DNA from: Macrostomum hystrix
Taxonomy: Eukaryota > Animalia > Platyhelminthes
Reading direction: 5' to 3'
NCBI GenBank assembly: GCA_950097015.1
Contig: CATNEN010000010.1
Span: 2,852,001 to 2,916,000, forward strand
Length of the DNA stretch: 64,000 nucleotides
Shown here piece by piece: positions 2,166-61,330 of the stretch (its first letter is position 1; every line of letters starts with the position of its first letter). The notes beneath the pieces were generated by a model. The model saw only the letters and a program-made list of their open reading frames with translations, made no database searches and was not told where the DNA came from. Position numbers and translations under genes: made by a program.

Positions 2166-3923
2166 TTGCTAATCCGGGCTTCATCTCGCTGCTTTTATAT
2201 ATTTTTTGTTAATTAAAAGTAAAGTACTTGTCTTCGTTCCTCGAACCCAGTTTCTGTTTAAGGCAGTGTTTTCACAGTGTACTCTTTGAGCACTCTTAAG
2301 TACTCGTACTCTGGTACTCTTTAAGGGCGTAGCAATAGAGTACTCTGGTATTCATTTAAAGTGCGTACTTTGAAGTGGGCGAGTACTTTTTAAAGTGCAA
2401 CGCATTTCAGTCTGTCATCATCAATCCTAATTTTGTACTATATGAAAGTGTCAATAATCGCTGGTACATTAGTACATTCTCGCAACGTAATTTAGTAGAT
2501 TTATTATATGCATTTTAAAGATACGTTGCTTAGGAAATAACAGATATGTTATCAGTCCTAATAATTATACCCTACGTACTGAAGTAACACAACATAATAT
2601 ATATGGTAACGTGGCTTGATGGCACTGCTAATGTGTGTGTCTGCCCATTCGTGTTGTTGCATGTACAAAACAAGTGCTGTTTGGATAAATCTTTCCTTTA
2701 ATTATGTTTTACGTTTTTTGACAGATGGGCATAGATAGATAGGTAGATAGATCTCATACTGTCTCTCTCACTCTCCGATTCTCCGCGCTCCCTCCCGCTG
2801 TTTTAATTTTGTTAATTTTGTTCCCAAATAAAAACAAAAATTCACCCTCTCCCTCCATATGTGGGTCCCGTATTCGGCTGTCAGTCAGTCAAGGAGATAT
2901 TAGCGCTCATCAAGATTTTGATACAGGAGTCAATGATGCAGTAGTCTGCTCTATTAAAGTGCTTCAGTGAGTATCCTCAGTACAAAGGCCGCTAAGTTTT
3001 GGAATATTTATTACATTTTTTGTTCATTTTATTGGGTGACATGATCAGAAGTAAAAAATAATTTCGAAATATTGAGCAATTAATGCACTTCGACCTGCTA
3101 AGGTGGCACACCTTCAATCTAGTACCTACCTACAAGGATATAAAATGTGATAATATAACATATTCTTTTCCATTAACAAGAGCAACATTCACTGGTGGAT
3201 GAGGAAAATGAAATGGTGGCTGAATGATATGAGTTTTTCCTGATGGCTTACAATAATATGCAAAATATGTTGGCATGAAGTAAGACTTCATTGGTCGTGT
3301 AATAATAAGCCATTTGTTACGAATGAATATTATTTTCCAAATAAGTGCTAGCAATGGCTCAGTCTGATCTTCTGTACTGACATCCTCAACTATTACTTGT
3401 CGCTGCTTAAGAGTTGGGGCATGATATATAAAGCCATTAATTTGTTGTCTTTGTGTTTGCTGACAAAAATCTGGAATATCACCAGTATGAATATTCAAAT
3501 ATTGTGCAATTTGCCTTACAACATTTTCTCCAAGTGCAACTTTAAGTTGGAGGGTTGTCAAAGATGATGCAGTTTGTTAAGAATGACATAATGAAGGCAG
3601 AATTATGGCTAGTCTAGTCTGATACCGTGATGAACAAGTCAAAGAAATGTTTTTAAAATTTCGTGAAATACGAGCAATATTCTTAAAAATTTGATGCACA
3701 GATTCATATCGCATTGACCAAGCAACTTTAAGACCATTGAATTGTAAAATTAGTTCTGGATAATGTAAAAGGTAATGAAGTTTACATTTTGTCTTTGGAG
3801 TACCATTTGATAATGAATAAATTAGTGAATTATGTTCTAAAATAAGTAGTTTTAAGGATTCCTCATTATATATTATTCCTATAGAATCATTAGCAAGTAG
3901 CCAAGACAGCAGCTCACAATGTA

Positions 3924-5231
3924 CGAGGGGTGTACTGAAAGTTTTGAGATGCACCAAAACCAAAAGTGTCTGAGTTAAATTCTCTGTCACAATTTTTCAA
4001 AGTAGTTGCCACCAGCTTGTGCACATTTCCTCATTCGGTGAAACCACTGCGTCCAGGCTCCAGCCCACTGTTCTTCAGGCACTGCTGAAACCACCCGCTC
4101 GAACTCGATTCTTGCTGCTTCAGGGCTCTCAAACCGAGTCCCGCGCAGTTGGTTCTTCACCAAAGGGAAGAGAAAGAAGTCGCAGGGTGCCAGGTCCGGC
4201 GAATATGCAGGATGCGTCACCAGCTGGACTCCATTCTCGGTCAGAAATGCCAATGTTGCAGCAGCCGTGTGCGCACTGGCATTGTCGTGGTGCAGCAGCA
4301 GGCCACGAAGTCCGGTGCGCGGCCGGCGTCTGCGCCACGCATCAAACACCAGCGGCAGGCACTGGTTGATGTACCAGTCGGCATTGACTGTACGCCTGTC
4401 TTGGAGCGCTACAGTCGCCAGGTGGCCAGCCTGGCTGAAGAAAGTCGCCACCATCTGCTTCCCGACGCTGCGGGCCCGCTTGACCTTCGTTGGAGTGGCA
4501 TCATCCGGAAGGAGCCAAACTGCCGACTGCTGCTTGGTTTCCGGGTCGTACTGGTAGACCCAGGTCTCATCACCTGTGACAATCTCCCAGCATCGCTTCG
4601 AGGTGCCAGAGTCGAATTTTTCAAGCATGAATTCGCACCAACGCACCCTCTCTGCTTTCTGGTCCTCCGTCAGGTTGTGGGGCACCCATCGGGCACATCG
4701 CTTGGAGGCTCCCAGCTTGTCGTGTAGGATGGTCGTAACCGCTGCCGATCCAATGCCAAGAGCCTCCCTGATCTCGGCACAGGTCACTCGCCGGTCTTCG
4801 TCGATCATTCTCTGGACGGCAGCGATGTTTTCGTCCGTGACAACGGAAACTGGACGTCCCGACCGAGGCTCGTCATCAAGGCTGCTCCGGCCCCACTTGC
4901 ATTCACTGTACCACCGAAAAACGGTGGCACGTGAAGTGGCTTGGTCTCCAAAGGCAGCACGTAAACTTTCAACGCATTGCTCTTGCGTGAGACCTTTACG
5001 CTGGTCGTAAACAATCATGGCACGAAAGTCGCGGTTTGTCAACTCCATTGGAGCGAGAACAGTTTGGTAGGGGGTATTGACTTTGAAGAGTGATTGTGAA
5101 AAATTGTCAAGAGCGCAAAGGCTGAAAATTTATACTCATTCATTTTTAAGGTGGTAGAGTATGTACATTAAAAGGCGTGCAGCTGCAACTTATAAGTCAG
5201 ACGTATCTAAAAACTTTCAGTACGCCCCTCG
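3924..5231 (-). mobile_element. Full-length mariner transposon (1308 bp)
   Basis: 27-bp TIRs CGAGGGG(T/C)GTACTGAAAGTTTT(G/T)AGAT with 2 mismatches; TA target duplication at 3922-3923 and 5232-5233. Confidence 0.97.
3987..5048 (-). CDS. Mariner D,D34D transposase, intact, 353 aa
   Basis: WVPHNL, TGDETW, HHDNASAH, YSPDLAPCDFFLF; 34 residues counted between the second and third Asp; N-terminal HTH region. Confidence 0.97.
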   Translation of the reverse strand: MELTNRDFRAMIVYDQRKGLTQEQCVESLRAAFGDQATSRATVFRWYSECKWGRSSLDDEPRSGRPVSVVTDENIAAVQRMIDEDRRVTCAEIREALGIGSAAVTTILHDKLGASKRCARWVPHNLTEDQKAERVRWCEFMLEKFDSGTSKRCWEIVTGDETWVYQYDPETKQQSAVWLLPDDATPTKVKRARSVGKQMVATFFSQAGHLATVALQDRRTVNADWYINQCLPLVFDAWRRRRPRTGLRGLLLHHDNASAHTAAATLAFLTENGVQLVTHPAYSPDLAPCDFFLFPLVKNQLRGTRFESPEAARIEFERVVSAVPEEQWAGAWTQWFHRMRKCAQAGGNYFEKL

Positions 5232-8200
5232 TAGTAACATAAGTCTCATTATAATATTTTTATTATTATTCTTACTTTCTCTTATAGTAGGACCAAAGTA
5301 AAGAAGCATTCTGAATACTACAGTTATCATATCAGCAGCACAGAAAGGCAATCGACTTTTACGCAAGTGAGGAATTGCAAGAATGGGGAGAGAAATATTA
5401 AAATGCTTAAGGATCTCCTTTATTTCTTTCAGGTTGAACATTTTTTCTTTTACTAAAAAGTTCAATACAAAACAAACAACTGTATGAGATACCTTCTAAA
5501 AGATCATGAAAAAAAATCAGGTGGAAAAAATAAAGGCATTGTAGTATAACCTAATTCCAAGAAAGTACAATAGTCTTTAATGCCATCAGAATCAATAGTG
5601 TGGGTAGCATCAATTCTTTGAAGATGTGAATATACTTTTAAACAGAAGTCTGAATCACTAACTTTAGCCTTACAAAACCTACAAACATAACCAGATGAAA
5701 AATTACCACCAATTCCATACAATGTATTAATTAAAAGGTTGTCCCCAACACAAAAACAAGCTAAAACAGGAATTCTTCTTTTATTAGATTTATTGTCAAC
5801 TAACACTTCAATGCCTATATCATAAAGATAATTTAATTCTTTAATCATTGGACTATATACTTCATTTAAAGTCAGCCCATCTTGATTACTGTTTTTATTA
5901 AAAATGTTTTTAAACTTCACAAGACTAGCCAAAAAAGTAATGCTTTGTTTGGACTCAAATTCTACTGGTAAATTTAAAATCTTAAAATACACTGCATATA
6001 TTTTATGATTAGTTTTAGCTTTTCTAATCGGGTTACAAACTTCAAATTCATCAGTATATAATGATAAGTAAATTACATTTTTATTGTCACTAGACTTTTC
6101 ATTATCTAATAAAGGAGTAATATACTTTTTAAAATATGGACTTGTAAAGAAAGAAGCCTTTTTTCCAATTCAGTATTAAAAATTAAATTTTGGAAGTCTG
6201 AAATTTGAAGAACCGATGTCAAAGTTTTTTCAATAGGAATATAATAAACTGGAGGTTTGTTTGGAGATACTTCTACTTTTTCTGGCTCAATATATGAGAA
6301 ATTCAGTTTTATGTATTTCATTAATTGTTTATCACTTAGGAGAATATCTAGACAATGATCGAAAAAATATCGAAATCCAATTTTTGTTTAATTTCTTCAA
6401 TTGTGTGAGGATCAATGCCAGTTTCATTAAGTACTAGTTCCATGAGATCAATAAAAGAATGAGAAAATGTTGCCAATATATCATGCACATTGTAAGATAA
6501 TATCTTTGAAGTAGAATTAGGAATACCATACTTGTCACGACCATTAATAAAAAATAAAATTATTTTCTGAGCTAAGTCAACTTGTATTTCATTTTTTAAA
6601 GTATTTGCACTTGCTTGGTTCAAATTTACGATGCCACGTCTGGAATCCAAGGTTTTTAAAGGATTATTTATATCTTTAGCTAGTTCAATTGACTTATGTC
6701 TCTCTTCAACTTCTTCATTGACATTAGGAGTATTAGCAATCAATATATTAGGATTGCTATCTATAATAGGCCTAGTTATTGTAGATTCAATTTGGGCTTC
6801 AGCTTCATCAAGCTCTGGATTAGCTGAAGGCCTGTTAATGATAGGCAAAGGGTTTCGAATTGAATTAATTGTTCTTCTATTCAGAGTTTGTTGAGCACGA
6901 AAATTACTATTTTTTAGATGTCGAAAAATTAGAGCTTTTGCCTTAGAGGTAACAATACAGCCCTTGATAGGGCAATGGAATCGTCTATTGTGAATGAATT
7001 GGTTGGCACAAAAATACTTATAGTGATAATTAAATGAAGAACTTTCATTTGTTGAATAATTACATTTGCAGCAATACATAAACAGAACAAATAGTTGAAA
7101 AACGGAAAACTTCAACATGATTAATGTGGAATATTTTGATGATGTTATGCTGGGAGGGATATTGTTATTTCTACTAATTTCAATTTGCCCTATTAATTAC
7201 CTTTTAGTATTAGCCTAGCCTCAGCCCTTGGCTTTAGTTAGTCTTATAAAAACAAATAAAATGTTTATTAAAAAGTAACCAATAAATGTATTAATAATAT
7301 AGTAGGTAGGAATAGCAAGAGGGATGCCTTCTTAAAAGTTGCAAGAAATTGCAAGAAACTTATTGCAAGAACCTTATTGCAAGAACCTTATTGCAAGAAA
7401 TTTTCAATTTATAAACTGAACTATATCAGTGGAAGCTATAGAGCGCTTGGCTAAGTCAACGACAAACGTGTGAAAGGAGAGAGGACAATGGATATGTAGA
7501 ATATCTGAATGTAAAAGAGAGGGTATTGAGAGGCAGCCATATTGCACAATCTGTTAACTTGCGCACTTTATAGGGTAACGTTTAAACAAAAGTACTGTTT
7601 TCAATTCATGCACTGATATTTTATTCCTATTAGTTTTACCATTATAGTACTAAAAAAATAATTAAATTTTGCATTGATAATTTTAGGCTGTTACTATAAA
7701 ATAAATAATAAATTAGTCGTTAATTGTAAATAGCGCAAGTAGGAGCCGGTGAAAAAAATGATTAAACCTTTAACCCACACAGGCAGGTACGTAAAAACTG
7801 TTATTTACAAAAAAATCGTTCTAGGGAAGTTTTTTCGCCAACTGACAAGGGAAAAAAGGGTTTTCCTTCCACAATGAGTTTGGCTACCATTCGGCCACAT
7901 TAACATACGGTCACTAGTGGGCCACTTTGTGGCTCTTTAGTGGCCACGTTTGACTTACAGTGTAGCTTCTGCTAGAAAATAGGAACAAAACATGCTTAAT
8001 GTCCTTTAGTCCAATAGAAGTCACAGGTGTCCATGAGTTGACTTGAAGACACAGGAGCCGCAGATTCCATGCGTCAGCTGATAAAATCTGTGAGTAGAAA
8101 TAGAAGCCAATTAAATTAGATGAAAATTATGAACTAAAACAACACTATATATGTGTATAAAAGCCCAATAGTCACATTTGAACAAAATTCAACATCTGGG

Positions 8201-8334: not shown

Positions 8335-8785
8335 TCACCACATTGGAAGAATACGCACAACACTTCGCACTGAAGCATTCGATGTTCGCTTGGGATTGCG
8401 AAGTCCCAAAAACACTTCTAGAGACTCTAGAACATTTTCTGTGAGCTTATCGTGCCGCAAGTTAAGAGCCAAAAATGATAGCAGGTATAATAAAATAGCA
8501 TCGAGTGTCGATTCAGCTGGAATGATCTGGTTAGCAACCAAAACTGCAGTCCACCTGCCGCTTTCTTCTGTTTTAATACTAACCAAACGGCTAGCATCGA
8601 AAATGGCATCCAGGGACTTAACTTTGCTCTTGATTGCCAGCAGCATGAATCCATTCTTAAAATTATTATCCTCAGATGGGCATCCATCGGCTAATAGGTA
8701 AGGCTTTGCACGCTTACTTCTGGCAAATAAGTCCCCACTTCTGGTAAACCAGAGCAGTATGGTGCGAATTTTGTCTTTCAAGGTT
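8335..8785 (-). pseudogene. C-terminal fragment of a CACTA accessory (SAMD3-like) ORF
   Basis: PYLL...N.FMLLA...STLDAILLYLLSFLALNLRH....LESLEVFLGL resembles the conserved C-terminus of TE-associated SAMD3-like proteins. Its 5' side is fused to truncated Ty3-1 pol. Confidence 0.5.
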
Positions 8786-8789
8786 GCAA

Positions 8790-11287
8790 TTGCATTTTTT
8801 TGCTGCCCATGCGACTGCTAGGAGCTCCAACTCAATCATCGCGTACCGCCTTTCCGTTTCTGATATAAAGCGAGAACCTGCTTGGACTATCTTCCAGATG
8901 CCATCGTCTTGCTTTTGCTGGAGTACGAAACCCAGGCCTTTCAGCCGGGAAGCATCGGTATGCAGTGCGGTCTGTTTTGACGGGCTATAGTACGCCATGG
9001 TGGGAATTTTACTCAACTCGTTCCGCATTTTGTCGAAAGCCTCCTCGTGCTGAACATCCCAGAGGAACTCGCTCGTGGGCTTCAGCAATTCTCGCAGTGG
9101 CCCACCCAGCGTTGCTATTTTGCCGCTGCAGACTCCCACTTGGTTGACTAGGCCGAAGAATGCCCGGAGATCTGTTATGTTGTCCGGTCTTGGAAACTCC
9201 CTAATGGCTTTCACTATCGCTGGGTCCATTGTAAATCCACTCGAGTCAAGCTGGAAGCCGGCGAATGTCACTCTGGGCTGGGCTAGCATGAACTTGTCCG
9301 GGTTGAGGCTGATCCCACGGTCTCTGCATCGCAGCAGGAACTCCCGTATGGCTTGTAAATGATCCGGAAGGTTATCGTGAGCAATGAGTACATCGTCCAC
9401 GATGTGATGCGTGTTCTGCAGGTCCACCAGCACTTCGTCCATCCGTCTGTTGAAGTGTTCAGATATGGATGACAATCCGAATGGTGCTCGCAGGTACTTG
9501 AACCTGCCGAAGGGCGTGATGAATGTCGTCAGCGGTTGCGACTCGTTATCCAGTGGCACTTGGTGGTAGCCCTTCGTTGCATCCACAGTTGTGAAGAACC
9601 TTGCATCATTTAAGTTCGACACTATTTCGAATGGCGTTTGGCTGATGTATCTTTCTCGAACGACATATTTGTTCAGATTCCGCAGATCAACACACAGTCG
9701 GATGTTACTGCGGTCCTTCTTGGGCTGCACGGTGATTGGCGCACACCATTCTGTCGGCTCGGTCACCTTGGCTATGACTCCTTCTCGTTCCAGCTCTTCG
9801 AGTTCTCTCTTGAGCATCGGCTTCAATGGCTCTGCGATCCTCCGCGGTGTTGAAACCGCAAAGGGCTTGGCATTGGCTGACAGCTTGATCTTGAAAGTTT
9901 CGCCGGACATTCTGCCGATCCTTCTGCTGAATACGTCTGCGAACTCTTTCTGTATAGTTCCCACCGGGCTGCTGTCTCTAGCCCTGGGGTCCAGCCTTCC
10001 GATGATTTGTTGCGGGAAGTTTCTTGGAATGATACCGAGCTCGCGGCATGTCTCTCTTGACAAAATCATGCTGGACACTCCGCTGATGACATGAAACTGG
10101 CGCTGTAGCTCAACTTTACCCAAGCTTATTTTTAGCTGGATCGATCCCATGGACTTCAGATGCCTACCGTCTATGGCCTGTGGCTGTACGTCGGATGGTA
10201 GTAGGTTGTTCGCGTCTTCACCAAGACTTGGCAGCAGGTCCTCTGGGATAGCATTAATAAACGCCCCCGTATCCGGCAGAGCTGAGACGGTCTTTACGCC
10301 GTCTTCCGTGCTGATGCTCAGCTGCACACAGGTTGCCGAATTCTCACTTGGCCTGTTGCTGCCCGTAACAGATAGTATCGAATGGAGTTTCTCGGCTCCG
10401 ACTGCATTCGAGCTACTTTGGCATTGCCTTGCGAAGTGGTTCGCCTTACCACATCTTTTGCATGGTTTTCCCCATGCTGGGCATTTCTCTTAGCCGACCT
10501 CGTGTTGACGTCCACAGAACTTGCAGCCCCGGTCCGTGGCCGCAGTCCGCCCGCTGGCTTGAGTATGCGGTCCGGTCTTTTGAGCTTCGGCAGTGCCATG
10601 ATGCCTTGACTGTTTGCCCTTCTTGTACGCTGACGCTCGTCGAAGAGCAGACATTTTCGACGTCTCGTTCTTCATTGTTGCGCAGTTCTTCCTGGAACTC
10701 TCCATTGTCTCGCAGATTGTCTTTGCGCGCTCCAGTGTGAGGTTGCTGCCTTCCTCCAATAGCTTCTCGACCGTCGCAGGGTCACGCAGTCCCATCACAA
10801 TGCGGTCGCGCAGTTGAAGGTCTTCGCAGTTTGCACAGCATCTCTGGAAATTGCATCGAGCTGCCATCTCCTTGATGACCACGAACCAATCGCCGAATGA
10901 TTCCCCGTCCTGCTGGTTGCGCAGCCAGAACTCGCGCCGCTCAAAAATGTCATTTTTCTGGCCGCTGATGAACAGCTCCAGTGCCTTGATGGTTTCACCG
11001 GCGTCGTCCTTGTGCTCAGCCTTCAGCTGAGGCAGGCTGTCGACGACCCGGAGGGTCTCCATGCTCAGGCAGTGGCGCAATGCGAAGAGCCGCAGCTTTT
11101 TCTTCTCAGCTGCCTCTGCGATTCCGTTCAGGCCGGACAGCTCTTCAAATGCTTCCCATAATTTCTTCCATTGTGGGAACAGATGCTTCTGCGATTCGAT
11201 GTCGAACTGGGGCGCTCCTCTGACGTCGATTTTCGGGGCCATGGCCAGAGTGACTCCACAACATATGTCGATGTCTGGGTCCGTCAC
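8790..11287 (-). pseudogene. Ty3/gypsy-1 gag-pol (Gag, CCHC, protease, RT, partial RNase H); integrase deleted
   Basis: ORF 10490-11287 and ORF 8714-10327 are in the same frame, separated by one TAA before EKCPAWGKPCKRCGKANHFARQC. Motifs LPDTGA, HIVDDVLI, HTDAS..GLG, ELLAVAWA. Homology ends at a TGCAATTGCA junction near 8790. Confidence 0.9.
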
Positions 11288-11330
11288 TTCAATCTAGGCA
11301 AGCTTTCTCAATTTGCTGCTTGCGATGCCA

Positions 11331-13564: not shown

Positions 13565-13620
13565 GTTGAGCTCGCTCAGACTCGCAGGGGGAGGCGGGAG
13601 TTTAAAAGCAGTTGAGCAGC

Positions 13621-22602: not shown

Positions 22603-22652
22603 GCCAAGCAGGCTTGCAGTTTGCTGAGGGTTAAAAATATTTATTGTAATTA

Positions 22653-23760: not shown

Positions 23761-23764
23761 TTGC

Positions 23765-49779: not shown

Positions 49780-50060
49780 AATGACGTTTTCGCAAAAATT
49801 GACTTTGCGACACATTCCGTCGTCATACTTCATGAAATTCGTCAGAAAGCTACCATAAGGGTGGGATGACCTCCCTGTCGGACTCGGGTTGATTTCCATG
49901 GAGGGTCTCTTCAGCTGGCGAAACAGGAAGAAGTCTGAGGGGGCCAGGCCTGGCGATGAGCCGGGTGGGGGGAGAATCTCGAGGCCGATATATAATGTGA
50001 TATAGCCGAATGACGAAAGTTGTTTCTCTCGCGCGCCACGCCCCTGCATGGTTCAAATAA
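49780..50060 (-). pseudogene. Degenerate mariner transposase C-terminal remnant
   Basis: GLEILPPPGSSPGLAPSDFFLFRQLK resembles the mariner (G)WEVLPHPPYSPDLAPSDFHLF motif; no TIRs found. Confidence 0.45.
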
Positions 50061-50583: not shown

Positions 50584-52989
50584 TGTAACACTTTCTCTCA
50601 GCAGTACGGTATTTCAAATTAGCGGGAGGGAAATCAGTTCACTTTCGGACACTACACTCGACTCACACGCTGTCGCTCCGATAAACGTTATACCACTCGA
50701 TGCTCGCAGTGTAATTCAGTTTAAAAAATTATTATTGTTACAATTTAAAACAAATGTATTGCGAATCCTCGAATATTGCGAAACTATTGATAGCGCGAAC
50801 TTTAAAATGTAAAAGGACTGTTAAAAACATAATGATACATCAGAACCGAGCTCATGTGAAAGCGGCAAACCTCAAAGTACTACACATATTTAAAAGTAGC
50901 AGGAGCATCATACTACATTACCCTCCCCTTCCAAAAAATCAATGTCCTCATTGATATAAAATAACGATAGGACGAGCTACAGGCTGGGAGATCGATGTGG
51001 AGTATTAGAGGAGATTAAAAACATTGGAATGACAACTGTGAATTATTTTTGAACGGCGAACATTACACAAAGATAAACTATTATCTGCAACTACGAGTGC
51101 ATGTACATGTAACACTGGCATAAGGAATCTGCCACCAAAGCACAACTGCACCATTACTGAGATAGGCAGGGCTGAGCGCAAAAAAACTCTCGCAGATAAA
51201 CACGCGCACTATACGTGCATCCAGTAGTATAGTAGAACTGACACTGAACTGCAACGCATTCGCGACAAGACACCACAAAGACTTCAACACAGCCACTGAA
51301 CTGCATGACCGTCAAAAGTGAAAAATCGATACAATGATTGATGACATGCTCGAGATTCACTTCTGGTCGCAAGGGGACGAAGACGCAGCAAAACAAAATA
51401 TATAGACACTTAACAATACTGTAGGAAAAATATTGGTAATCATCTACATCTACATGTACATGTACACTATATAAAGAGAGAAATAAAACTGGTCCGACAG
51501 GCAATGCGATCAGTAATTAAGGGGCGGGCAACGCAGAGCTCGGTGATCAGCGGACACATGTGATCAAGCCGCCGCCCCGGTCATGTAGGCTTCGTGCCTG
51601 CGCCGCGCAGCAACGGCTTTCGGTCCACGGCTGCTCCCAGAAGCCGCAGCTGCCTCTTCCATCGGGGACACAGCCGCTGAGCCAAGCAGCAGGGCGCAGC
51701 CGTCCATGGGCTCGAGCTCGATGCCGCTGACGACCATGGGGCGCCGCTGATGCCAGGGCGGACTGCATGCGCCGCCGCCTCCGATGCCGATGCCATCGAC
51801 GGCGCCGATGTGGACTCTGCAGTTCGGGCGGCCGACGGCCTCGGTGGCGATGCGCTGCCATGCGCTTGCCCTGCTCGTCTGCCGGGTCATGACGCTGCTG
51901 TGCGTCGCTGCCTTTCAGGCGACGTTCCTCGCCCTCCGTGATTGCGTGCAACTCCGTTAAGGCAACCCGCAGGCGCAGCTTTGCCTCCATCTAGACTCTG
52001 GTCGCCTCTGCAGTCAGGGCCTCGGCTGAACAACGCCGCGCCTTGATCTCTTGCGTCGCCGCCTCCAACTTGCGCTGCTCGTCTGCCAGGAGTTTCCGCT
52101 GCTCGGCCAGGCGCTGTTGCTCCTCAGCATGGCACACCTTCTGTTCGGTGAGGTGCTGTAATTCCTCAGCTTGGTTCCACATGGCTTCCTCGAATTGACG
52201 CCGGAAATCCTGTGCTTGGCGATGCAGAGCCTCCTCGGCCTGACGACGCAGCTGCTCCTATGCCTGGCAACGCAGCTGCTCCTCGGCCTGGCGACGCAGC
52301 TGCTCCTCTGCCTGGCGTCTCAGCTGCTCCTCCGCCTGGCAACGCAGCTGCTCCTCCGCCTGGCGTCTTAGCTGCTCCACGGCCTGGCGCTGCAGTGCTT
52401 GGCGGTCTTTCTCTTCCTCTAGCTGTTGCTCTAGGTCGTCTATTTTATTCAGTTGGAGCTCCAGCCAAGAAACTGACTTTAGCAGTCCCGCCGGCAGTTT
52501 CTGCGGGATCTGCTGACACAGTCCGCTCTCGCGACATCCCTAAATATACCGGGCCATGCAGAACTCCGCCTCTGTAACGTAATTGTCGCCATTTCGATCA
52601 GCTAGCCACCAAAGCTCGCTTCTTTCAGCTGCTGATAGGCTGCTATCGCGGAACCAGATCGCGTAGAATTGAAAGCGGCTGACGAGTCCGTAAAGCAACT
52701 TTGGTGTACCGTGAAACTGATGGCGATAGTCATCCAAAAGATCAGCGGGGATCTGCCAGTTTCTCCACACGGTAACCGTCATCGCGACCAGAAGATCCTC
52801 GATCGTCGTCCTGGCGTGGTCGCCAAATGTACAACACTTTCTCTCAGCAGTACGGTATTTCAAATTAGCGGGAGGGAAATCAGTTCACTTTCGGACACTA
52901 CACTCGACTCACACGCTGTCGCTCCGATAAACGTTATACCGCTCGATGCTCGCAGTGTAATTCAGTTTTAAAAATTATTATTGGTTACA
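50584..52989 (-). mobile_element. Non-autonomous LTR element (about 160-bp LTRs) carrying an EH-domain ORF
   Basis: Near-identical direct repeats 50584-50742 and 52828-52989 with TGT..ACA ends; PBS TGGCGACCACGCCAGGAC (52808-52825, tRNA-Arg-like). No PPT or TSD seen; no gag/pol motifs. Confidence 0.8.
51547..52782 (-). pseudogene. EH (Eps15-homology) domain + coiled-coil ORF with three in-frame TAG stops
   Basis: WQIPADLLDDYRHQF..SSLSAAERSELWWLADRNGDNYVTEAEFCMARYI*..QIPQKLPAGLL aligns by eye to the EH consensus; followed by (RRQAEEQL)n from a 24-bp repeat. ORFs 52540-52863, 51991-52182 and 51547-51990 share one frame. Confidence 0.7.
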
Positions 52990-53422
52990 CCGTCACACCC
53001 GCCTCCCTCCCCAAAAGGCGGTAGGTGAGCGCAAAAAGATCGAAAGCATTAAATTACGATAAATAGCTAGTATAAATGTCTCTTAGAGTCGAACAACGTG
53101 AAAGGGTGTTTAAAAACCGAAGCAAACTAAATTTTTCTTCGCAAGCAACCTACTACGAGTAATAATGCTGGAAATGACAATCGAAATACGAATATTCTTG
53201 GTCACAAAATTGGCACGAAAAATATTTGACTGATTTAGGAAATTAAAATGCACTGGCGGAAACACGATATGAGAAAAATATTGTATTTGAGATATTCGTT
53301 AGAAGAACTGTTATAGTATTGATTATAGTCCAAGTTATCATATAAAAAATTCCTGACTAGATCGCTGTACGGTGTGGTGCTCTACAAGTCATTTACGGAG
53401 TTCGAGGCAACGTCACGGTCGC

Positions 53423-53760
53423 GCCTGTGGTGGCCCTGGAACGCCTGTTGTGGCCTTGATCGCCTGTCGTGGCCCTGGAACGCCTGTTGTGGCCTTGATC
53501 GCCTGTGCTGGCCCTGGAACGCCTGTTGTGGCCTTGATCGCCTGTGGTGGCCCTGGAACGCCTGTTGTGGTCTTGATCGCCTGTGGTGGCCCTGGAACGC
53601 CTGTTGTGGTCTTGATCGCCTGTGGTGGCTCTGGAACGCCTGTTGTGGCCTTGATCGCCTGTGGTGGCCCTGAAACGCCTGTTGTGGTCTTGATCGCCTG
53701 TGGTGGCTCTGGAACGCCTGTTGTGGCCTTGATCGCCTGTGACGGCCCTGGAACGCCTGT
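53423..53760. repeat. 39-bp tandem repeat (8-9 copies) in the Ty3-3 3' region
   Basis: Unit GTGGTGGCCCTGGAACGCCTGTTGTGGCCTTGATCGCCT. Confidence 0.95.
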
Positions 53761-54245
53761 TGTGCTGCAGCCACCGACGTCTTGGCAGCTGGCGGTGACT
53801 GGCCTGCCCGCCCCTTTACTAACTAACTGAGCCACCCGCCCGAGAAGAGAAGGAAAGGAGAGAGAAGAAAAACCGGCGACCTAAACTCACGAGACTGCGA
53901 AAATGATGCCAGGAACCAGAGAAATGAACGGAGAGTGCTTGCTGCACCGTCAACCCTACAGCCCGAAGCGCAGGCATCCACTGAACAGTAAGTGCGGCAA
54001 GCGGACGGACTAACAGCAACCTGGTATCCGATACCAAGAAAAAATATAATGTCAAATTTTAGTTTCTTTAACTTGCTTTTTTATTTTTTTTTCAGGAAAA
54101 CGTATTTCCTTTTTTTGACGTTTTTTTCACATTTTTCATTTAAAAAGAGTTCCCTAGTTTTATACAGTAAGAACTTGGGACGTAGGCGGCGAAATCTTTG
54201 CTACATGTACGAGCTAACTTCCTAGGTGCACGTAGGCACGGTTAT

Positions 54246-57200
54246 CTAACGTCTAGTACAAAATCGCACCACTCTGCTTAGAAAACGTTGAGGCTTGCGC
54301 ACCTGACGACCGGAACGGGTCGTCATGACCGGAGAAAGTGTGGAACCAGCACTTGCCGGTTCACTTGGTGCCACTAAGTCCTCAGCTTGTTGACCTGCGC
54401 CGGAACTTTCCACGGCGTCTTCATTTAATGACGCCCCAGGCCTGGTGTCACTGTTATCACCTAAGCCTTTCGAGCTTATACTTTCGTTTACTGCTGCAAT
54501 GGTACTGTTGGAGTGAATCACCTGGGGTTCAAACCCCTGTTCAGCTAGGATTTGCACCTCCGCTCCCACCTCAGGTACTTCATCCGGCCGCATCACTACA
54601 AGAGAAGTTTCCAAGGCTTCTGGCGGCGAATCCGGAGGCAAGGTGCGTCGTGAGTCAGGCGAAGTCACACGCGGTGGGTCAGTCGGCAAGATGTGCTGTG
54701 GTTCAGGCGACGATGCGCGCCGTGGCTCAGGCGGCTCGGTGCGTGCTGACACAACCGACACCGCAGCGTAAGATGGACATCGGACTTCGTCCTCTGAGGA
54801 GTACGAAATTTCACTGGCGCGTTTTTCGCATGGGTGATACTCTTCTGACTCGCTGGTCGTTCCTGGACTAGGGTCAGCTCGACCCACTGACTGATCATCT
54901 AACAGGCCCAACCGCGATGGTGGGATCATGGCTGGAACCCTCAGTCCAAATCTGTCCACAACGTCCTGATACGTCTGTTTACGAATGCAGCGCTTAATGC
55001 GGTCTACATTGTAAATGTTGTGATTCGGATTCGGGGCTTGACAAAGTGGGTTAACCCGAGCGAACTCGGGTATGAGGCGGTAGTTTCGCTCGGAAATCTT
55101 TTGAACCACCTTGTACGGCCCCAGCCACACAGCCGTGTCCAATCCTCGATGGTCAGGATTCAGAACCCAGACAAGTTCGCCGATTTCGAAGTTAGAATGA
55201 ATGGCGTTGGGGTCATAATTCCGTTTTTGCCTTTGCTGGGCTTTGCCTCGCACCTGACGAGCAATTGCAGGCACCTCCACCAAGAGTTTGTGAAGCCTGT
55301 GGGCGTAGGAGTCTGGATTATACCGGTCTTGTCTTGGAGTGTTGAACTTTAGATCCAGTTGCAGGGTGAGCTCGCGGCCAAAGAAGAGCCTGGCTGGAGT
55401 CCATCCTGTTGATTCGGCCGTGGTGCTTCTGATAGAGAGGCCTACTAGCTGGGCTGCAAACGGCCAGTTTATTCTTTTTTCAAGGCAAACAGCGCGGATC
55501 TGGGCTTTGATCGTCTGCACTGTTCGCTCCGCTTTGCCGTTTGCCTGTGGTCTGCGCGCGGTGATTCGCGATAGGTCTACTTCTAGTAGACGGGCGAGTT
55601 CGGCAATGGTCTTGTTTACAAACGCTGTTCCATTATCTGAAATCAAGCTCTCCATGGCACCATAGCGGACAACCCACTCAGTTAGAATGGCTGTAGCCGT
55701 TGTTTCGGCAGACACGTCAGAGACAGGTATGATCTCCACAAATCCTGAAAAATTGTCGACTAAGATTAGCAGGTACCGACTGCCGTCTAGTTCAGGGAAT
55801 GGACCGGCGTGGTCTGCATGTACGATTTGATTCGGGTATCCTGATTGGATTGGTTTCAGAGGTTCTTTATTCAAGCGTTTGCTTTTCTTCGTCCGACTAC
55901 AGATCTCGCACTCCGCTATTACACCTTTGACAAACACTTCCAGGTTTGTGATTTGAAACCTCTGCTTCAATGCTCGGACTGTTTTACCAGTTCCACAGTG
56001 GTTGATTTCCCTGTGATAGCAGGACACTAGCTCGTCGATATCCGCAGTTTCAGGTATAATGATGAGACGTTTGGCTATTTGACCTTGCTTGGCGGGCTTG
56101 ACGCGAATCAACAGACCGTCCACAACCTCAAGCTCGTCAAACATGGCCCACAACGTTCGGATTTCACGACTACAGTCCTGAACTTCCTCTTTCTTTAGCT
56201 TCGGAGAGTTCCCTGCAACAGCTTCGATGAGCCTGACTAGGTCCGTGCTAGACTCTTGTGCATCTCTGGCCCAAATGTTCTCAGCTTCCTGAGTCATCTC
56301 ATCTTCGTCTGAGTCTTCTTCCAATTGTTCTACTTGACCTGCCCGAGACGCGTGTTGGCCTTGATTGACTCCGATCTCACCTGACATCTGAGATATGGGA
56401 GCAAGCGCAAACTGATTTTCTGACACCTCATTGGGTTGGTAAGATAGTACGGTTGCAGATGATGGTAATGTGCATGTACTGTCCTGTTGTAAAGGGATGT
56501 GTGATGTTCGACTAATTACATTTGGTTGCTCCGTTTGCGTTTCTGTTGTCATCATTTCTGCGTCGGCTTCATGTCTATCTCTGGCCGTCACTTCAGTTTT
56601 AGTGACTACAGAGTCGCTACCTGACTGAGGTTGTGTCTTGCAGAGTTCTGGTGGTGGTTCTGTTTGACTGGAAGTGTCTGTTCGTGTGGCTCTCAGTTGT
56701 ACTGGTACCTGGACGAACTCTTGATCCTTCTGGTTTTCTTGTCCTTCTAAGCTTCTAAACTTCTCATTGAAAGCTTCGATCTGGCTACATGTAGGACAGT
56801 CGTGATGGTCAGCCCTAAATCTTGGATTACGACTGAGCACATCTGCGTTGACATGCTTGACTCCTGCACGATGCTCAACAGAGAAGTCATTTTCAGCCAG
56901 CCGCTCTAGGGGTGTTTGACTCACGCTGAAGTCATACACCTCGATCGTAGCTAGCCATTGTGCTAGCATACCTGTGGAATGCTTCTTAGTGTGTAGCCAT
57001 TGTAGGGCGGCTGCGTCTGAGCGCACAAGAAACTTGCGGTCCAGCAGATATGTTCGAAAATGTTCCAGCATGATGACAAGTCCAAGTAATTCACGCATCG
57101 TGGCGCAGTAATTCTTCTGCGATTGTGTGAATTTTTTCGAAGCATACGCAACGACGTGCTCCTGACCACCTGGACCTTCTTGTGACAAAACGCCGCCAAC

Positions 57201-60200
57201 TCCTTCAAGCGAGGAGTCGCAATCTAAGATGAAGAGCCCAGCTGACGGACTGAAGTCAGGGTACGCAAGGATTGGAGGCGCGCACAGATTTGCTTTCAGC
57301 TCTTCGAAAGCTTTGTCATGCTGCTCCAGCCAGCAGAATGTCGACGATCCTTTAGCTAGCGCATACAGCGGCGATGCGATCACGGAAAAACGTTGCACGA
57401 ACTTTCTATAGTAGTTCGCGAATCCTAGGAACGCTAATAATTGCTTTTTATCTGATGGTTTGCACCAATTCTTTACCGCGTCGATCTTTGCTGGGTCGGC
57501 TTCAATTCCTTGAGCTGAAACAACGAAGCCTAAGAACCGAACGCGATCCTTGAAAAGCTCACATTTAGCTGGTTTAATTTTTAAGTTTGCCTTTTTAAGT
57601 TGCCAGAGGACAAGCGCCAAGTGGACGATCATTTCGTCATTGTCCCTGGCCTTTATGATTATATCGTCAAGATAGATAAGACTCACGCGCATGAGTAAAG
57701 GCCTGAACACCCTGTGCATCAACTTGGCAAAGTTTGCCGGTGCTGTCTTGATGCCAAAGGGTACGACCTTCCATCGGAAAGTGCCTTGGGGGCATGAGAA
57801 TGCTGTGATGTCTCGATCGCATTCGCGAATACCTACTTGCCAATAAGCTGCGGTGAGATCTAAACTGGAAAATATTTTCGACTCTGCTAGGCTATCAAAC
57901 GATTCTTCTATTAGTGGTAAAGGAAAGGTGCATGGCTTGATTACTTTGTTGACCTGTCGATAGTCAATACACAGGCGTTGGGAACCATCTTTTTTCCGAA
58001 CTAAGACTATTGGAGAGGACCACTCAGAGTCGCACTCTTCAATGATTCCTTGATTGACTAACTGGCTTATATGTTTGTCTAAAAATTCCTTCTGCGAGGG
58101 GGTCGTGCGCCTAGATGGCTGCCAGATAGGGCGGCAAGCCGACTCCTGCAGCTCAATTGTCATCTCATGTACATGTGTTTTTCCTAGGTCTGTTTCGCTA
58201 AGCGATATCTGACTACTAAAATAGTTCAGCAGCTTAAGTGTTACTGTCAGCTGGTTCTTCGATAGGGTGGTCTCATTGAGCTTAAACTGTGTAGTCAGCC
58301 AAGATGCTATTCCTGGGTCTGGGTCAGGGAGTTTTGCAAGCTTGGCTCCAAGATCTTCAGAGCTGCTGATGGAGAAATCTTTCTCAGATACAGGCGTGAC
58401 AGAAATTGAATCCCCATGTTCAAGGCTCCTAAAAGAGGCGATTTCCTGCCCCATGGAGATCGATGATGGCTGGTCACTACTGTTTAATAGGCGCACGAGT
58501 ACATGGTTAGTGGTGCTTACACTGTCAACAGAGTGTGCTACGAACAGCTCTGAGTCCCGGCAGAAGAGTTTAGTGCCTAGAACACCCTGAGTACCAGGAT
58601 CAGCACCTGAGACCCGGCTTGGCACCATAGTCTCTGACCTGGGGAGTAGCTGCACGTTGCAGGCGGCTGTGACTCTGCGTGCCTGGAAAACTCCCTTGTC
58701 ACCTTCAATGACTGGTACAGGCTCTCCAGCTACAGTTACCTGACCATCAGCAACAAGCAAGTTAACGCTAAAGCTTCTCATAAAGTCTATTCCTAACAGC
58801 AAATCTGAAACCTGACCTACCGTTACCAGGAAAACGTGGGTCTGCTTCTTCTTTCCAAGTTTGACCTCACAGTGAAGCGTGCCCAAAATCTGTGACGAGG
58901 TTCCATTGAATGCTGTCGCGGCTTGGTATTGTCTAGCAGGGACAAATTTGTGATTTATGGGATCATTTGCGATCAGCTGGTCCTTGATTTTAGTTCCAAC
59001 GACACTAGCATTGCAACCTGAATCAAGGCAAGCGATGTACTTATCGTTACCTATTTCTAACTGCACGAACATGCTGGACTCGACTCTAGCCTCGTTAGTC
59101 AGCGTTTGATCACAACGGACAGGGAATGGATAGCGGCAGACTCCTATCGCCTTATCTCGGTTGTGAGCTGGGTCCGTTTGACGCCAGAACTGTACGATTG
59201 TGCCTACCAGTTGGCGCCGATTGGCTAACTGTTGTAGCTCATTGTCTAAGCTGGATTGATGAAAGAAGATGGAGCCTGGTATTTGGCTTGGTTGGATGAA
59301 GCCAAATCCAGTCTTCAAAGCCGTGATGGTACCTGTCTCCATCACCTGACTCTGAGAAACGATGGTGTTTGGTCTTCCACCACCTGTCCCGCCGAAGGGC
59401 AATGGCTGTGGGCAGTCCGCGGTACGATGATCACCAGCACCGCATCGGTTGCAGGACCTGCGCATCTTGCGAGATTGGTGACTTTTTTGGGTCCTATAAC
59501 TATCCATTTTGTGTGTCTGTGGTCCTTGGTCACTGGTAGAGTTAAGATTTGCATGCCCTTTTAATTGGGACTCTGTCTGGAAGGCTGGCGAAGAAGCCTG
59601 ATTTTGCTGAAGCAGTTTCTCTAGTTCACGAACACGGGCTTCCAGCTCTGCTGTTCTGTCAGGAGCTGCTGTCCTTACAACAAGAGGGACAGTTTCACCG
59701 GACAGGAGCTTCTTGACGCCTGCTATTTCCCTAGCCTTCTTTGCAAGATCTTCAGCTGTCCATGATGGGTTCTCTTGCCCAAGAAGTATCAGCCTTTCTG
59801 CAAGGGCCTTGTCTCGCAGCCCATAGCAGAACCTTGCTCGGACTAGAGGTTCAGCATCACATTTTTTCCTGTTCGCTGTTTTCGACAGCCTTATCAACCT
59901 GTCAAAGAACTCTTGTGTGGATTCCAGATTTGTCTGAGTCGCGGCAGCTAGTTCTAAAAAGCTCTTATGTTCAGTTCCTGAGTCTGTGAATCGCTCTTTA
60001 AGCCTCATCAGAGCTGTCTGAATGGATTCATGGTGCAATGAGTTGTTGAATATGAATTCTTGGCACTCAGGTGCCAGCATGGACAGCAGGACTGCTGGTT
60101 GTTGTGGGGTTGGCACGTGGTGTGCATCAACATACGTTAGGAACTGTGTTTCCCAAAGCTCGAAATTCATTTCTGGTTGGAATGGTGGTGGTGGTCGCAG

Positions 60201-60446
60201 TTTAGGGCTTGAATTAGGGATTTTCTCAGCTGCTGTTGATGCTTCTCTGTCACACGTTTTTTCTAGTATCATAGTCAGAGTCTGGAGCACTTTTTGCAGT
60301 TCTAACTGGCCTACATTTACTTCAGGTGGCTTCACATCATTGTTCCCTCCTGGTGGAGCTGACTGAGTTTGGTTGTCTCCTGCCTGTAGGTTCACTTGAG
60401 CTCCAGCACCATCAGGCGGCAGTGCCTCGTCACCCTCTCCGATCAT
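54246..60446 (-). CDS. Gag-Pol polyprotein, 2066 aa: Gag, CCHC, cold-shock-like domain, protease, RT, RNase H, integrase
   Basis: CNRCGAGDHRTADC; LDSGC; IYLDDIII; LDCDSS..GGVLSQ; H..INH..C..C; ADHAGP, SDNGTAF, GKAER; GPY; terminal TRSGRQVRKPQRF. Confidence 0.95.
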   Translation of the reverse strand: MIGEGDEALPPDGAGAQVNLQAGDNQTQSAPPGGNNDVKPPEVNVGQLELQKVLQTLTMILEKTCDREASTAAEKIPNSSPKLRPPPPFQPEMNFELWETQFLTYVDAHHVPTPQQPAVLLSMLAPECQEFIFNNSLHHESIQTALMRLKERFTDSGTEHKSFLELAAATQTNLESTQEFFDRLIRLSKTANRKKCDAEPLVRARFCYGLRDKALAERLILLGQENPSWTAEDLAKKAREIAGVKKLLSGETVPLVVRTAAPDRTAELEARVRELEKLLQQNQASSPAFQTESQLKGHANLNSTSDQGPQTHKMDSYRTQKSHQSRKMRRSCNRCGAGDHRTADCPQPLPFGGTGGGRPNTIVSQSQVMETGTITALKTGFGFIQPSQIPGSIFFHQSSLDNELQQLANRRQLVGTIVQFWRQTDPAHNRDKAIGVCRYPFPVRCDQTLTNEARVESSMFVQLEIGNDKYIACLDSGCNASVVGTKIKDQLIANDPINHKFVPARQYQAATAFNGTSSQILGTLHCEVKLGKKKQTHVFLVTVGQVSDLLLGIDFMRSFSVNLLVADGQVTVAGEPVPVIEGDKGVFQARRVTAACNVQLLPRSETMVPSRVSGADPGTQGVLGTKLFCRDSELFVAHSVDSVSTTNHVLVRLLNSSDQPSSISMGQEIASFRSLEHGDSISVTPVSEKDFSISSSEDLGAKLAKLPDPDPGIASWLTTQFKLNETTLSKNQLTVTLKLLNYFSSQISLSETDLGKTHVHEMTIELQESACRPIWQPSRRTTPSQKEFLDKHISQLVNQGIIEECDSEWSSPIVLVRKKDGSQRLCIDYRQVNKVIKPCTFPLPLIEESFDSLAESKIFSSLDLTAAYWQVGIRECDRDITAFSCPQGTFRWKVVPFGIKTAPANFAKLMHRVFRPLLMRVSLIYLDDIIIKARDNDEMIVHLALVLWQLKKANLKIKPAKCELFKDRVRFLGFVVSAQGIEADPAKIDAVKNWCKPSDKKQLLAFLGFANYYRKFVQRFSVIASPLYALAKGSSTFCWLEQHDKAFEELKANLCAPPILAYPDFSPSAGLFILDCDSSLEGVGGVLSQEGPGGQEHVVAYASKKFTQSQKNYCATMRELLGLVIMLEHFRTYLLDRKFLVRSDAAALQWLHTKKHSTGMLAQWLATIEVYDFSVSQTPLERLAENDFSVEHRAGVKHVNADVLSRNPRFRADHHDCPTCSQIEAFNEKFRSLEGQENQKDQEFVQVPVQLRATRTDTSSQTEPPPELCKTQPQSGSDSVVTKTEVTARDRHEADAEMMTTETQTEQPNVISRTSHIPLQQDSTCTLPSSATVLSYQPNEVSENQFALAPISQMSGEIGVNQGQHASRAGQVEQLEEDSDEDEMTQEAENIWARDAQESSTDLVRLIEAVAGNSPKLKKEEVQDCSREIRTLWAMFDELEVVDGLLIRVKPAKQGQIAKRLIIIPETADIDELVSCYHREINHCGTGKTVRALKQRFQITNLEVFVKGVIAECEICSRTKKSKRLNKEPLKPIQSGYPNQIVHADHAGPFPELDGSRYLLILVDNFSGFVEIIPVSDVSAETTATAILTEWVVRYGAMESLISDNGTAFVNKTIAELARLLEVDLSRITARRPQANGKAERTVQTIKAQIRAVCLEKRINWPFAAQLVGLSIRSTTAESTGWTPARLFFGRELTLQLDLKFNTPRQDRYNPDSYAHRLHKLLVEVPAIARQVRGKAQQRQKRNYDPNAIHSNFEIGELVWVLNPDHRGLDTAVWLGPYKVVQKISERNYRLIPEFARVNPLCQAPNPNHNIYNVDRIKRCIRKQTYQDVVDRFGLRVPAMIPPSRLGLLDDQSVGRADPSPGTTSESEEYHPCEKRASEISYSSEDEVRCPSYAAVSVVSARTEPPEPRRASSPEPQHILPTDPPRVTSPDSRRTLPPDSPPEALETSLVVMRPDEVPEVGAEVQILAEQGFEPQVIHSNSTIAAVNESISSKGLGDNSDTRPGASLNEDAVESSGAGQQAEDLVAPSEPASAGSTLSPVMTTRSGRQVRKPQRFLSRVVRFCTRR

Positions 60447-61018
60447 TTAGAGAAGCGGAATGAGAATAGGAAAAGAGGAGATGGAAGGTTAAAGGTGAAG
60501 GCAGACACAGAATTGTCTGGCAGAGAAAGAGGCCCCTACTCAAATTCTTGGAAACGCTGGCGAACGACCAAAATTTTATGTGCTAAACTCTGCCAGACGG
60601 GCCCTATACAAAAAATTATTTCTAAGCCTAAAAACGAGACAGCCTCACCAAGCCAGTACTGCCAGTGCCGCGGCGTGTTGAGCTCGTGGGGGTGTTGTCG
60701 CTCTGGCTGAGGACGTACAATTAACGTTGGACTTGCGGTCGGACACTGGTTAGGTCGTCTCTGATTGGTTGGCAGGTAATCAGCCAATTAGGTTGCTCCG
60801 ACTTCTAACTTCTAGCTTCTAGTATTCCAAACTAGGCAGTCACAGCTAGGCAAACAGGCAACTATGACGGTGCATATGCCCTTTAATTCGGCACTTGCTG
60901 TTGGTCAGGGTTAGACGCCGATGTTGATGTGTAGTCAGTAGCAGTGTAGAAGTGTAGTAGTGTAGCGGTAGCGGTAGCAATTTTGTTCTTGTCTTCGAGG
61001 TGGGACCCTCCAAATTTA

Positions 61019-61330
61019 TGTGACGAATAAAGGTTAGTGTAGCGGTAATATCGTCGAATTATATTTGATATAAATGTGTATATATATTTCCAAAGTAATC
61101 TCGATGCTCACACGCTCGACACAAGGCAGGGTAGAGCAGAAAAATATACATACGTTGCTTTTTAAAAAGGACAGCTAATTCTTAGAATGATACAATATAA
61201 CAATAATTAGTAAAAATGCTTAGCATATAAATAATAATCTTGTCAGCAACTTGTAATGTAGCGAATTACTATAAAATAAATAAGCAATTAAACTACCAAT
61301 TAAACTACAATTAAAGGTTACACCGTCACA
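61019..61330 (-). repeat. 5' LTR of Ty3/gypsy-3 (312 bp)
   Basis: 7-bp terminal inverted repeats TGTGACG/CGTCACA with adjacent PBS. Confidence 0.85.

What the first reader, a model, noticed from the sequence alone, without database searches (positions are those of the whole stretch)
3130..61330. All strand-assignable elements across 58 kb point the same way: piRNA-cluster-like architecture
Seen: 15 coding units (CACTA-1, mariner, SAMD3-like fragment, Ty3-1, DIRS, CACTA-3, Ty3-2, CACTA-2, ZF-PWWP, CACTA-A, RTE, CACTA-B, mariner remnant, EH-LTR element, Ty3-3) are all on the minus strand; plus-strand elements (two Helitrons, a LINE remnant) lie only outside this span. Known: uni-strand piRNA clusters such as Drosophila flamenco show this bias because one long transcript is antisense to the trapped TEs. 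Inference: a plus-strand transcript here would be antisense to members of at least five TE superfamilies. Caveat: nested fragments are not independent events, and DNA transposons are included.
Basis: partly seen in the sequence, partly recalled or inferred. Interest (0 to 1): 0.75.

Follow-up and report, generated by a model that had tools for sequence, protein, structure and literature searches.

The report
Co-oriented transposon pile-up in a flatworm
A 58-kb stretch of a flatworm-like genome is packed with transposons of at least six kinds that all point the same way, as in a one-strand piRNA source locus; the sequence alone cannot show that it is one, and such loci are already known in flatworms.

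Summary
Every unit I could assign to a strand between 3130 and 61330 lies on the minus strand. Eleven of 67 minus-strand ORFs gave real Pfam domains, against 0 of 60 plus-strand ORFs. A blastx against 126 Ty3/RTE proteins hit the minus strand only, and no paralogue pair is inverted. Two complete plus-strand Helitrons bracket the span.

The 15 units are not 15 events. Structure supports 10 to 12 independent insertions, three with clean hallmarks:
- a mariner with TIRs and a TA duplication, inside a CACTA-like gene;
- an RTE-like LINE with a 19-bp duplication, inside another CACTA-like gene;
- a 5.07-kb element with CACTG ends.

The nominal two-sided P is 0.002 to 0.0005. No genome-wide background could be computed.

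The closest protein relatives are from Macrostomum lignano (74% and 47% identity), so this is a macrostomid-like flatworm, not human. Flatworm piRNA clusters are known and largely unidirectional.

A plus-strand piRNA precursor is the best single explanation (about 0.4). Chance (about 0.3) and another long plus-strand transcript remain open. Nothing here tests transcription or small RNAs. Plus-strand AATAAA hexamers are not depleted. Unlike flamenco, DNA transposons share the bias. At most this is a new member of a known kind.

The parts
569..1631 (+). Left boundary: complete non-autonomous Helitron copy (host A, then TC...CTAG, then host T) with a short Pif1-2B remnant
   Evidence: It is 95-99.6% identical to the right copy. 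The 3' hairpin plus CTAG lies at 1628-1631.
3133..7962 (-). CACTA-like (CMC) type I copy 1. Its transposase gene pieces are 3133-3996, 5220-5495, 5507-6169 and 6351-7196. The upstream terminus CACTGTAAGTC..GTGGCC is at 7962. The other terminus was not found.
   Evidence: Transposase_21 scores 26.5 bits, below the cut-off. It shows 27-50% aa paralogy to 22804-23758.
3924..5231 (-). mariner with 29-nt TIRs, TA duplications (3922-3923 and 5232-5233) and an intact 353-aa ORF (3990-5048), nested in the coding region of type I copy 1
   Evidence: HTH_48, Transposase_1; TIRs 93% complementary.
8338..11293 (-). Ty3/Gypsy internal fragment (PR-RT-RNase H; no integrase, no LTRs)
   Evidence: (blastx 8681-10375; no LTR).
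11834..14763 (-).
   Evidence: RVT_1 has E = 2.6e-15. No PR, IN or tyrosine recombinase was found.
14913..17402 (-).
   Evidence: DUF1258, 27 bits, below cut-off; E = 0.001 to the type II transposase.
19350..21115 (-). Ty3/Gypsy fragment (PR-RT only), ending exactly at the left TIR of the next element
21116..26188 (-). CACTA-like type I copy 2, 5,073 bp. It has ~29-nt TIRs (CACTGTRAAAAATAWGTGGCCGAAAAAGT) and GTGGCC subterminal repeats. The right end is duplicated within a 159-bp tandem repeat (second copy ends at 26347). No target-site duplication.
27200..28116 (-).
   Evidence: (PWWP 25.2 bits against a cut-off of 25.6), (no PDB relative).
30900..36081 (-). CACTA-like type II copy 1, with an intact 620-aa exon and in-frame 45-nt and 33-nt arrays
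   Evidence: Best relatives are M. lignano proteins at 47% and 45%, one named as a DUF4218 domain protein.
38480..48221 (-). CACTA-like type II copy 2, a decayed multi-exon gene with GT-AG introns, split by the RTE insertion
   Evidence: It is 51% identical over 461 aa and colinear with copy 1.
38604..42777 (-). RTE-like LINE with a 1,302-1,313-aa EEP-RT ORF and a 19-bp target-site duplication GAAGAAGAGCCCGACGAAG (38585-38603 and 42778-42796)
49921..49986 (-). Possible mariner remnant (weak)
   Evidence: 22 aa, 55% identity, E = 0.002.
50584..52989 (-). Non-autonomous LTR element with 160-165-bp TG..CA LTRs and a primer binding site (TGGCGACCACGCC) after the 5' LTR. The interior carries EF-hand/EH-like and coiled-coil coding.
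52998..61330 (-). Ty3/Gypsy element with an intact 2,066-aa Gag-PR-RT-RH-IN ORF (54249-60446). Its upstream end starts TGTGACGGTGTAACC at 61330. A purine tract (53012-52998) abuts the neighbouring LTR. No matching LTR pair of its own.
   Evidence: (74% to an M. lignano protein).
61524..63445 (+). Right boundary: Helitron copy with a Pif1 2B/C-terminal helicase ORF (62095-62793)

Best explanation
The span is a transposon accumulation zone in a macrostomid-like flatworm genome. At least 10 independent insertions from six or more superfamilies have been kept in one orientation: CACTA-like of two lineages, mariner, Ty3/Gypsy, another RT element, an RTE-like LINE and a small LTR element. The most likely cause is orientation-selective retention under a long plus-strand transcription unit. 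The best-fitting kind is a unidirectional piRNA precursor, whose processing would give piRNAs antisense to every trapped element.

Shown: element identities, strands, nesting and boundaries.

Inferred: the plus-strand transcript, its processing into piRNAs, and selection on orientation.
For: - All strand-assignable units are on the minus strand, and no plus-strand coding remnant was found.
- Three nested or abutting insertions with clean hallmarks are also co-oriented, so the bias spans old fragments and young intact copies.
- The nominal P is 0.002 to 0.0005.
- The closest relatives are M. lignano proteins.
- M. lignano has uni- and bidirectional clusters of up to 93.7 kb, and Macpiwi1 piRNAs are mostly antisense to transposons.
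- In Schmidtea, 268 of 270 clusters are unidirectional.
- In Drosophila, strand-biased LTR content alone predicts flam-like clusters with a median precision of 0.76.
- A rough Bayes sketch used the 0.63% genome share as the prior and my own assumed likelihoods. It gives about 0.14-0.65 for 10-12 events.
Against: - There are no expression or small-RNA data.
- The prior is low: clusters cover 0.63% of the M. lignano genome, with a median length of 9.7 kb.
- AATAAA is not depleted on the plus strand (60 against 37).
- DNA transposons share the bias, unlike flamenco-like loci, where it is Gypsy-specific.
- Several elements keep long intact ORFs.
- No promoter was identified.
- The genome-wide frequency of such runs is unknown.
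Confidence: 0.4

Rival explanations
1. Chance. This is an ordinary nested transposon pile-up whose 10-12 independent insertions happen to share an orientation. It was noticed because it is striking.
For: - The independent events number fewer than the 15 listed.
- P of 0.002-0.0005 would still give several such windows by chance in a genome of a few hundred Mb, which is my own estimate.
- No sequence feature points to a transcript.
Against: The run is unbroken across all classes and ages of element. It ends at both sides in plus-strand Helitrons. With the weakly supported units included, P falls to about 1e-4.
Confidence: 0.3
2. A long plus-strand transcription unit that is not a piRNA precursor, such as a very long intron or a lncRNA. 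Sense-oriented insertions would be purged because they disrupt transcript processing.
For: Antisense bias of LTR elements and LINEs inside genes is well documented (PMC3088655).
Against: - No plus-strand exon or domain was found in 60 ORFs.
- A minus-strand LOTUS-domain gene starts at 196 just to the left.
- The intronic bias is described there for LTR elements and LINEs, and DNA transposons were left out of that analysis.
- Plus-strand AATAAA is not depleted.
Confidence: 0.15
3. A mechanistic orientation bias at insertion or retention, for example replication-direction or target-structure preference, or instability of inverted copies.
For: The three nested or abutting insertions with clean hallmarks are all co-oriented with their hosts.
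Against: The elements use unrelated integration chemistries. I know of no shared mechanism. The paralogues are too diverged at the DNA level for recombination to act.
Confidence: 0.1
4. Assembly artefact or segmental duplication that inflates the count.
For: Near-identical Helitron copies lie 61 kb apart.
Against: The Helitron flanks differ, so the copies are separate insertions. There is almost no internal DNA repetition, and the paralogues are only 27-56% identical in protein.
Confidence: 0.03

Closest known systems
Drosophila flamenco and flam-like unistrand piRNA clusters
   Same: A dense mosaic of transposon fragments and recent insertions, almost all in one orientation, over tens of kb. 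Sequence-only prediction from strand bias works in Drosophila.
   Different: - Flam loci are 200 kb to over 1 Mb, and their bias is carried only by Gypsy elements, many of them env-bearing.
- Here the span is 58 kb and DNA transposons and a LINE share the bias.
- No env-like domain was found downstream of the intact Ty3 element. Only part of that stretch was scanned.
- No promoter or piRNA data exist.
Unidirectional piRNA clusters of flatworms (Schmidtea: 268 of 270; M. lignano: 436 clusters)
   Same: The host lineage is related and the size is within range (maximum 93.7 kb). Macpiwi1 piRNAs are predominantly antisense to transposons.
   Different: Those were defined by mapped small RNAs. Membership of this locus is untested, and the species is probably not M. 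lignano itself: the best TE protein identities are 74% and 47%.
Antisense bias of retroelements in introns
   Same: The same logic of orientation-selective retention under a transcript.
   Different: No host plus-strand gene is evident. The bias here is complete and includes DNA transposons.
Nested transposon islands in repeat-rich genomes
   Same: Element-in-element insertions with target-site duplications, truncated fragments and mixed ages.
   Different: I know of no reason for such islands to be co-oriented. That rests on my general knowledge and was not tested here.

Membership tests
Unistrand (flamenco-like) piRNA cluster | Locus of tens of kb or more made mostly of transposon fragments | tested here: met
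   About 47 of 58 kb is assigned to TE units.
Unistrand (flamenco-like) piRNA cluster | Strong strand bias of the transposon insertions | tested here: met
   All 10-14 units are on the minus strand and none on the plus strand.
Unistrand (flamenco-like) piRNA cluster | Abundant 24-32-nt, 1U-biased small RNAs from one strand | not testable with these tools
Unistrand (flamenco-like) piRNA cluster | A single long Pol II transcript from a discrete promoter | not testable with these tools
   The only indirect count is AATAAA, 60 on plus against 37 on minus, so there is no depletion.
Unistrand (flamenco-like) piRNA cluster | Bias carried specifically by Gypsy/ERV elements (the Drosophila definition) | tested here: not met
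   mariner, CACTA-like and RTE-like units are equally co-oriented. The three Ty3 units are a minority.
   Met for type I copy 2 (21116 and 26188) and for one end of copy 1 (7962). Not found for the type II copies.
   The flanks are CTG against TAA at 21116 and 26188. The element abuts a truncated Ty3, so the original flank may be lost.
   Transposase_21 scores 26.5 and 20.8 bits (cut-off 28.6) and DUF1258 27 bits (cut-off 33.1). One M. lignano homologue is named a DUF4218 domain protein.
DIRS retroelement | Tyrosine recombinase together with RT/RNase H | tested here: inconclusive
   The RT is present. Pfam (E up to 1) and a PDB sequence search found no recombinase, only SAP and a faint DNA_meth_N hit.
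mariner/Tc1 | HTH plus DDD transposase, short TIRs and a TA duplication | tested here: met
RTE-like non-LTR retrotransposon | A single ORF with an apurinic-type endonuclease and RT, plus a target-site duplication | tested here: met
   Clade assignment by phylogeny was not done.
Ty3/Gypsy LTR retrotransposon (54249-60446) | PR-RT-RH-IN order | tested here: met
Ty3/Gypsy LTR retrotransposon (54249-60446) | A pair of matching LTRs | tested here: not met
   Only a 15-nt shared start and patchy similarity to the neighbouring 165-bp LTR were found.
Helitron (boundary elements) | 5' TC, a 3' hairpin plus CTAG, insertion between A and T, and a Pif1-type helicase | tested here: met

The most novel reading that the evidence does not exclude
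A flatworm master locus of the flamenco type that traps all transposon classes, DNA transposons included, in antisense. It would be transcribed rightwards from a promoter region shared head-to-head with a LOTUS-domain germline-type gene (Oskar/TDRD7-like) whose first coding exon lies at 196-2 on the minus strand.
Probability: 0.08. Interest if true: 0.6.

Novelty: new member of a known kind. Interest (0 to 1): 0.3.

Why it matters
If small-RNA data confirm it, this would be a well-resolved example of a unidirectional piRNA trap outside arthropods. Dated nested insertions would show that orientation selection acts on DNA transposons as well as retroelements. It would also suggest that strand-run scanning can find piRNA source loci in unsampled flatworm genomes. 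If it is chance, it is an ordinary repeat pile-up.

Tried and rejected
I could therefore not recover the source contig, the species or any other loci, and could not compute a genome-wide background.
- Rfam and tRNA scans found nothing.
- A general search for CACTA TIRs with duplications gave only the type I copy 2 pair. No termini were found for the type II copies.
- Sensitive blastn found no LTR pairs for the three Ty3 units.
- PDB sequence searches gave nothing for the SAP ORF or the zinc-finger ORF.
- The 'SAMD3-like' label and the plus-strand 'LINE remnant' could not be reproduced.
- I rejected a 61-kb tandem unit, because the Helitron flanks differ.
- I rejected a giant Helitron capture, because the span lies between a 3' end and a 5' end.
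- The big representative protein search was not used. No claim rested on the absence of relatives.
- The spliced CACTA-like genes were searched piece by piece by reference.
- The contig is not human.
Full report
**What the window is.** It is repeat-dense eukaryotic DNA with GC-rich coding blocks (45-57% GC) in an AT-rich background (31-37% GC). The closest relatives of the intact Ty3 polyprotein are three Macrostomum lignano proteins at 74, 69 and 61% identity. The closest relatives of the 620-aa CACTA-like ORF are also M. lignano proteins, at 47 and 45%. The RTE-like ORF has no relative above 38%. I take the source to be a macrostomid-like flatworm, probably not M. lignano itself.

**Check of the observation.** Long ORFs are strongly asymmetric inside 3130-61330. 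There are 15 minus against 1 plus at 300 aa or more, and the single plus ORF lies in a 45-nt tandem array that is open in all frames.

Pfam places these on the minus strand:
- a mariner transposase (3990-5048);
- a Ty3 PR-RT-RNase H fragment (8717-10327);
- an RT (11834-13564) with an upstream SAP-domain ORF;
- a DUF1258-like ORF (15423-16181, below cut-off);
- a Ty3 PR-RT fragment (19350-21272);
- a borderline PWWP (27200-27493);
- an endonuclease-RT LINE ORF of 1,302 aa (38661-42566);
- Tnp2-type hits, both below Pfam's cut-off (5507-6169 and 46594-47634);
- an intact 2,066-aa Gag-PR-RT-RH-IN polyprotein (54249-60446).

Two CACTA-like lineages are each present twice, always co-oriented:
- Type I: 3133-5495 matches 22804-23758.
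- Type II: 31448-35979 matches 42890-47562, 51% identical over 461 aa and colinear.

I then tried to break the observation:
- Twenty plus-strand ORFs of 90 aa or more and 39 of 60-89 aa, none antisense to confirmed coding, gave no real domain. One further plus ORF lies in a tandem array. The only hits are low-complexity matches inside tandem arrays.
- That is 11 of 67 minus ORFs with real domains against 0 of 60 plus ORFs, Fisher P = 7e-4.
- blastx of the whole window against the 126 Ty3 and RTE proteins fetched so far hit only the minus strand.
- tblastx of the window against itself gave no opposite-strand pair outside the tandem array.

Limits of this test: Pfam through ORF pieces cannot see badly decayed fragments, and non-coding elements (MITEs, SINEs, solo LTRs) cannot be given a strand here.

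**Boundaries.** Two complete non-autonomous Helitron copies on the plus strand bracket the span, at 569-1631 and 61524-63445. Each lies between a host A and T, starts with TC, and ends with a hairpin plus CTAG. They are 95-99.6% identical. Their outer flanks differ, so they are separate insertions and not a 61-kb repeat unit.

**Anatomy and independence.**
- The mariner (3924-5231) has 29-nt TIRs and TA duplications. It sits cleanly inside the coding region of type I copy 1.
- Type I copy 1 keeps its upstream terminus, CACTGTAAGTC..GTGGCC, at 7962. It is therefore not a separate unit.
- Type I copy 2 is a complete 5,073-bp element (21116-26188). It has ~29-nt TIRs and GTGGCC subterminal repeats. 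It abuts the protease end of a truncated Ty3 and has no target-site duplication.
- The RTE-like LINE (38604-42777) is flanked by a perfect 19-bp duplication. It splits the acidic C-terminal exon of type II copy 2, which therefore runs from about 38480 to 48221.
- The small LTR element (50584-52989) has TG..CA LTRs and a primer binding site that fix its polarity.
- A purine tract directly upstream of that element's 5' LTR, and a shared 15-nt start (TGTGACGGTGTAACC, also at 61330), suggest that the big Ty3 and the small element are related and perhaps joined through a shared LTR. They may count as one event.
- None of the three Ty3 units has its own LTR pair.
- The 'DIRS' label is not verified. 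No tyrosine recombinase was found.

Ten to twelve insertions are well supported as independent, and up to fourteen with the weak ones. This gives two-sided P values of 0.002, 0.0005 and 1.2e-4. The bias covers both old truncated fragments and young copies with intact ORFs and perfect duplications.

**What it most likely is.** Random orientation is a poor fit for one window, but I cannot say how often such runs occur in this genome. Three facts from the literature raise the piRNA reading above a mere resemblance:
- M. lignano has 436 piRNA clusters (median 9.7 kb, maximum 93.7 kb, 0.63% of the genome), both uni- and bidirectional. Macpiwi1-bound piRNAs are mostly antisense to transposons and enriched for unique mappers (PMC4604429).
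- In Schmidtea, 268 of 270 clusters are unidirectional (PMC6824462).
- In Drosophila, strand-biased LTR content alone predicts flam-like clusters with a median precision of 0.76 (PMC11400887).

A rough Bayes sketch used the 0.63% genome share as the prior and my own assumed likelihoods. It gives about 0.14-0.65 for 10-12 events. I put the piRNA-precursor reading at 0.4.

Against it:
- Nothing here shows transcription.
- AATAAA is more frequent on the proposed transcript strand (60 against 37).
- In flam-like loci the bias is carried only by Gypsy elements (PMC10643416). Here DNA transposons share it.

The rivals are chance (0.3), a non-piRNA plus-strand transcript such as a long intron (0.15; antisense bias in introns, PMC3088655), a mechanistic insertion bias (0.1) and an artefact (0.03).

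**Comparison and novelty.** It works like a unistrand piRNA trap, if it works at all. Two sequence-level criteria for membership are met. The functional criteria are untestable here, and the Drosophila-specific Gypsy criterion is not met. Unidirectional clusters are already known in flatworms, so this is at most a new member of a known kind.

Noticed in passing
window 2-196 (minus strand): A first coding exon runs off the left end and encodes an OST-HTH/LOTUS domain (Pfam E = 4e-6, above the cut-off). The best solved relatives are the LOTUS domains of Oskar and TDRD7. In other animals (my own knowledge, not checked here) such proteins are germline and piRNA-pathway factors. The gene is co-oriented with the transposon array and lies about 3 kb from it.
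   Followed up: partly
window 569-1631 and 61524-63445: Two complete Helitron copies, 95-99.6% identical and in direct orientation, lie 61 kb apart and exactly bracket the minus-only span. The left copy is an internal-deletion derivative of the right type.
   Followed up: yes
window 21202-21259, 26109-26412, 26482-26940, 30984-31390, 32199-33484, 44112-44448, 52217-52389, 53422-53764: Every tandem array inside the span has a main period divisible by three (27, 159, 51, 33, 45, 69, 24, 39). Several lie in transposase or captured-gene coding regions. Others (51 and 39 nt) lie where no ORF was identified.
   Followed up: no
window 21122-21207 and 21254-21339: An 86-nt, 99% complementary inverted repeat lies just inside the left TIR of CACTA-like type I copy 2. 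A 159-bp tandem duplication repeats the right terminus together with flanking DNA.
   Followed up: partly
window 3130-61330: AATAAA occurs 60 times on the plus strand and 37 times on the minus strand. This is the opposite of what selection against premature termination of a plus-strand transcript would predict.
   Followed up: partly
window 54249-60446 (residues 371-409 of the ORF): The Gag region of the intact Ty3 element has a sub-threshold cold-shock-domain match (25.8 bits against a cut-off of 27). One M. lignano relative (P0009) also carries PF00313. This suggests a Ty3 lineage with a cold-shock domain in Gag.
   Followed up: no
window 50584-52989: The small LTR element has no gag or pol. 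Its interior carries EF-hand/EH-like and coiled-coil coding, which looks like a captured host-gene fragment.
   Followed up: partly
window 8338-8680 (minus strand): An open coding stretch directly follows the truncated RNase H of the first Ty3 fragment. It has no domain hit and no paralogue in the window, so its origin is unknown.
   Followed up: no
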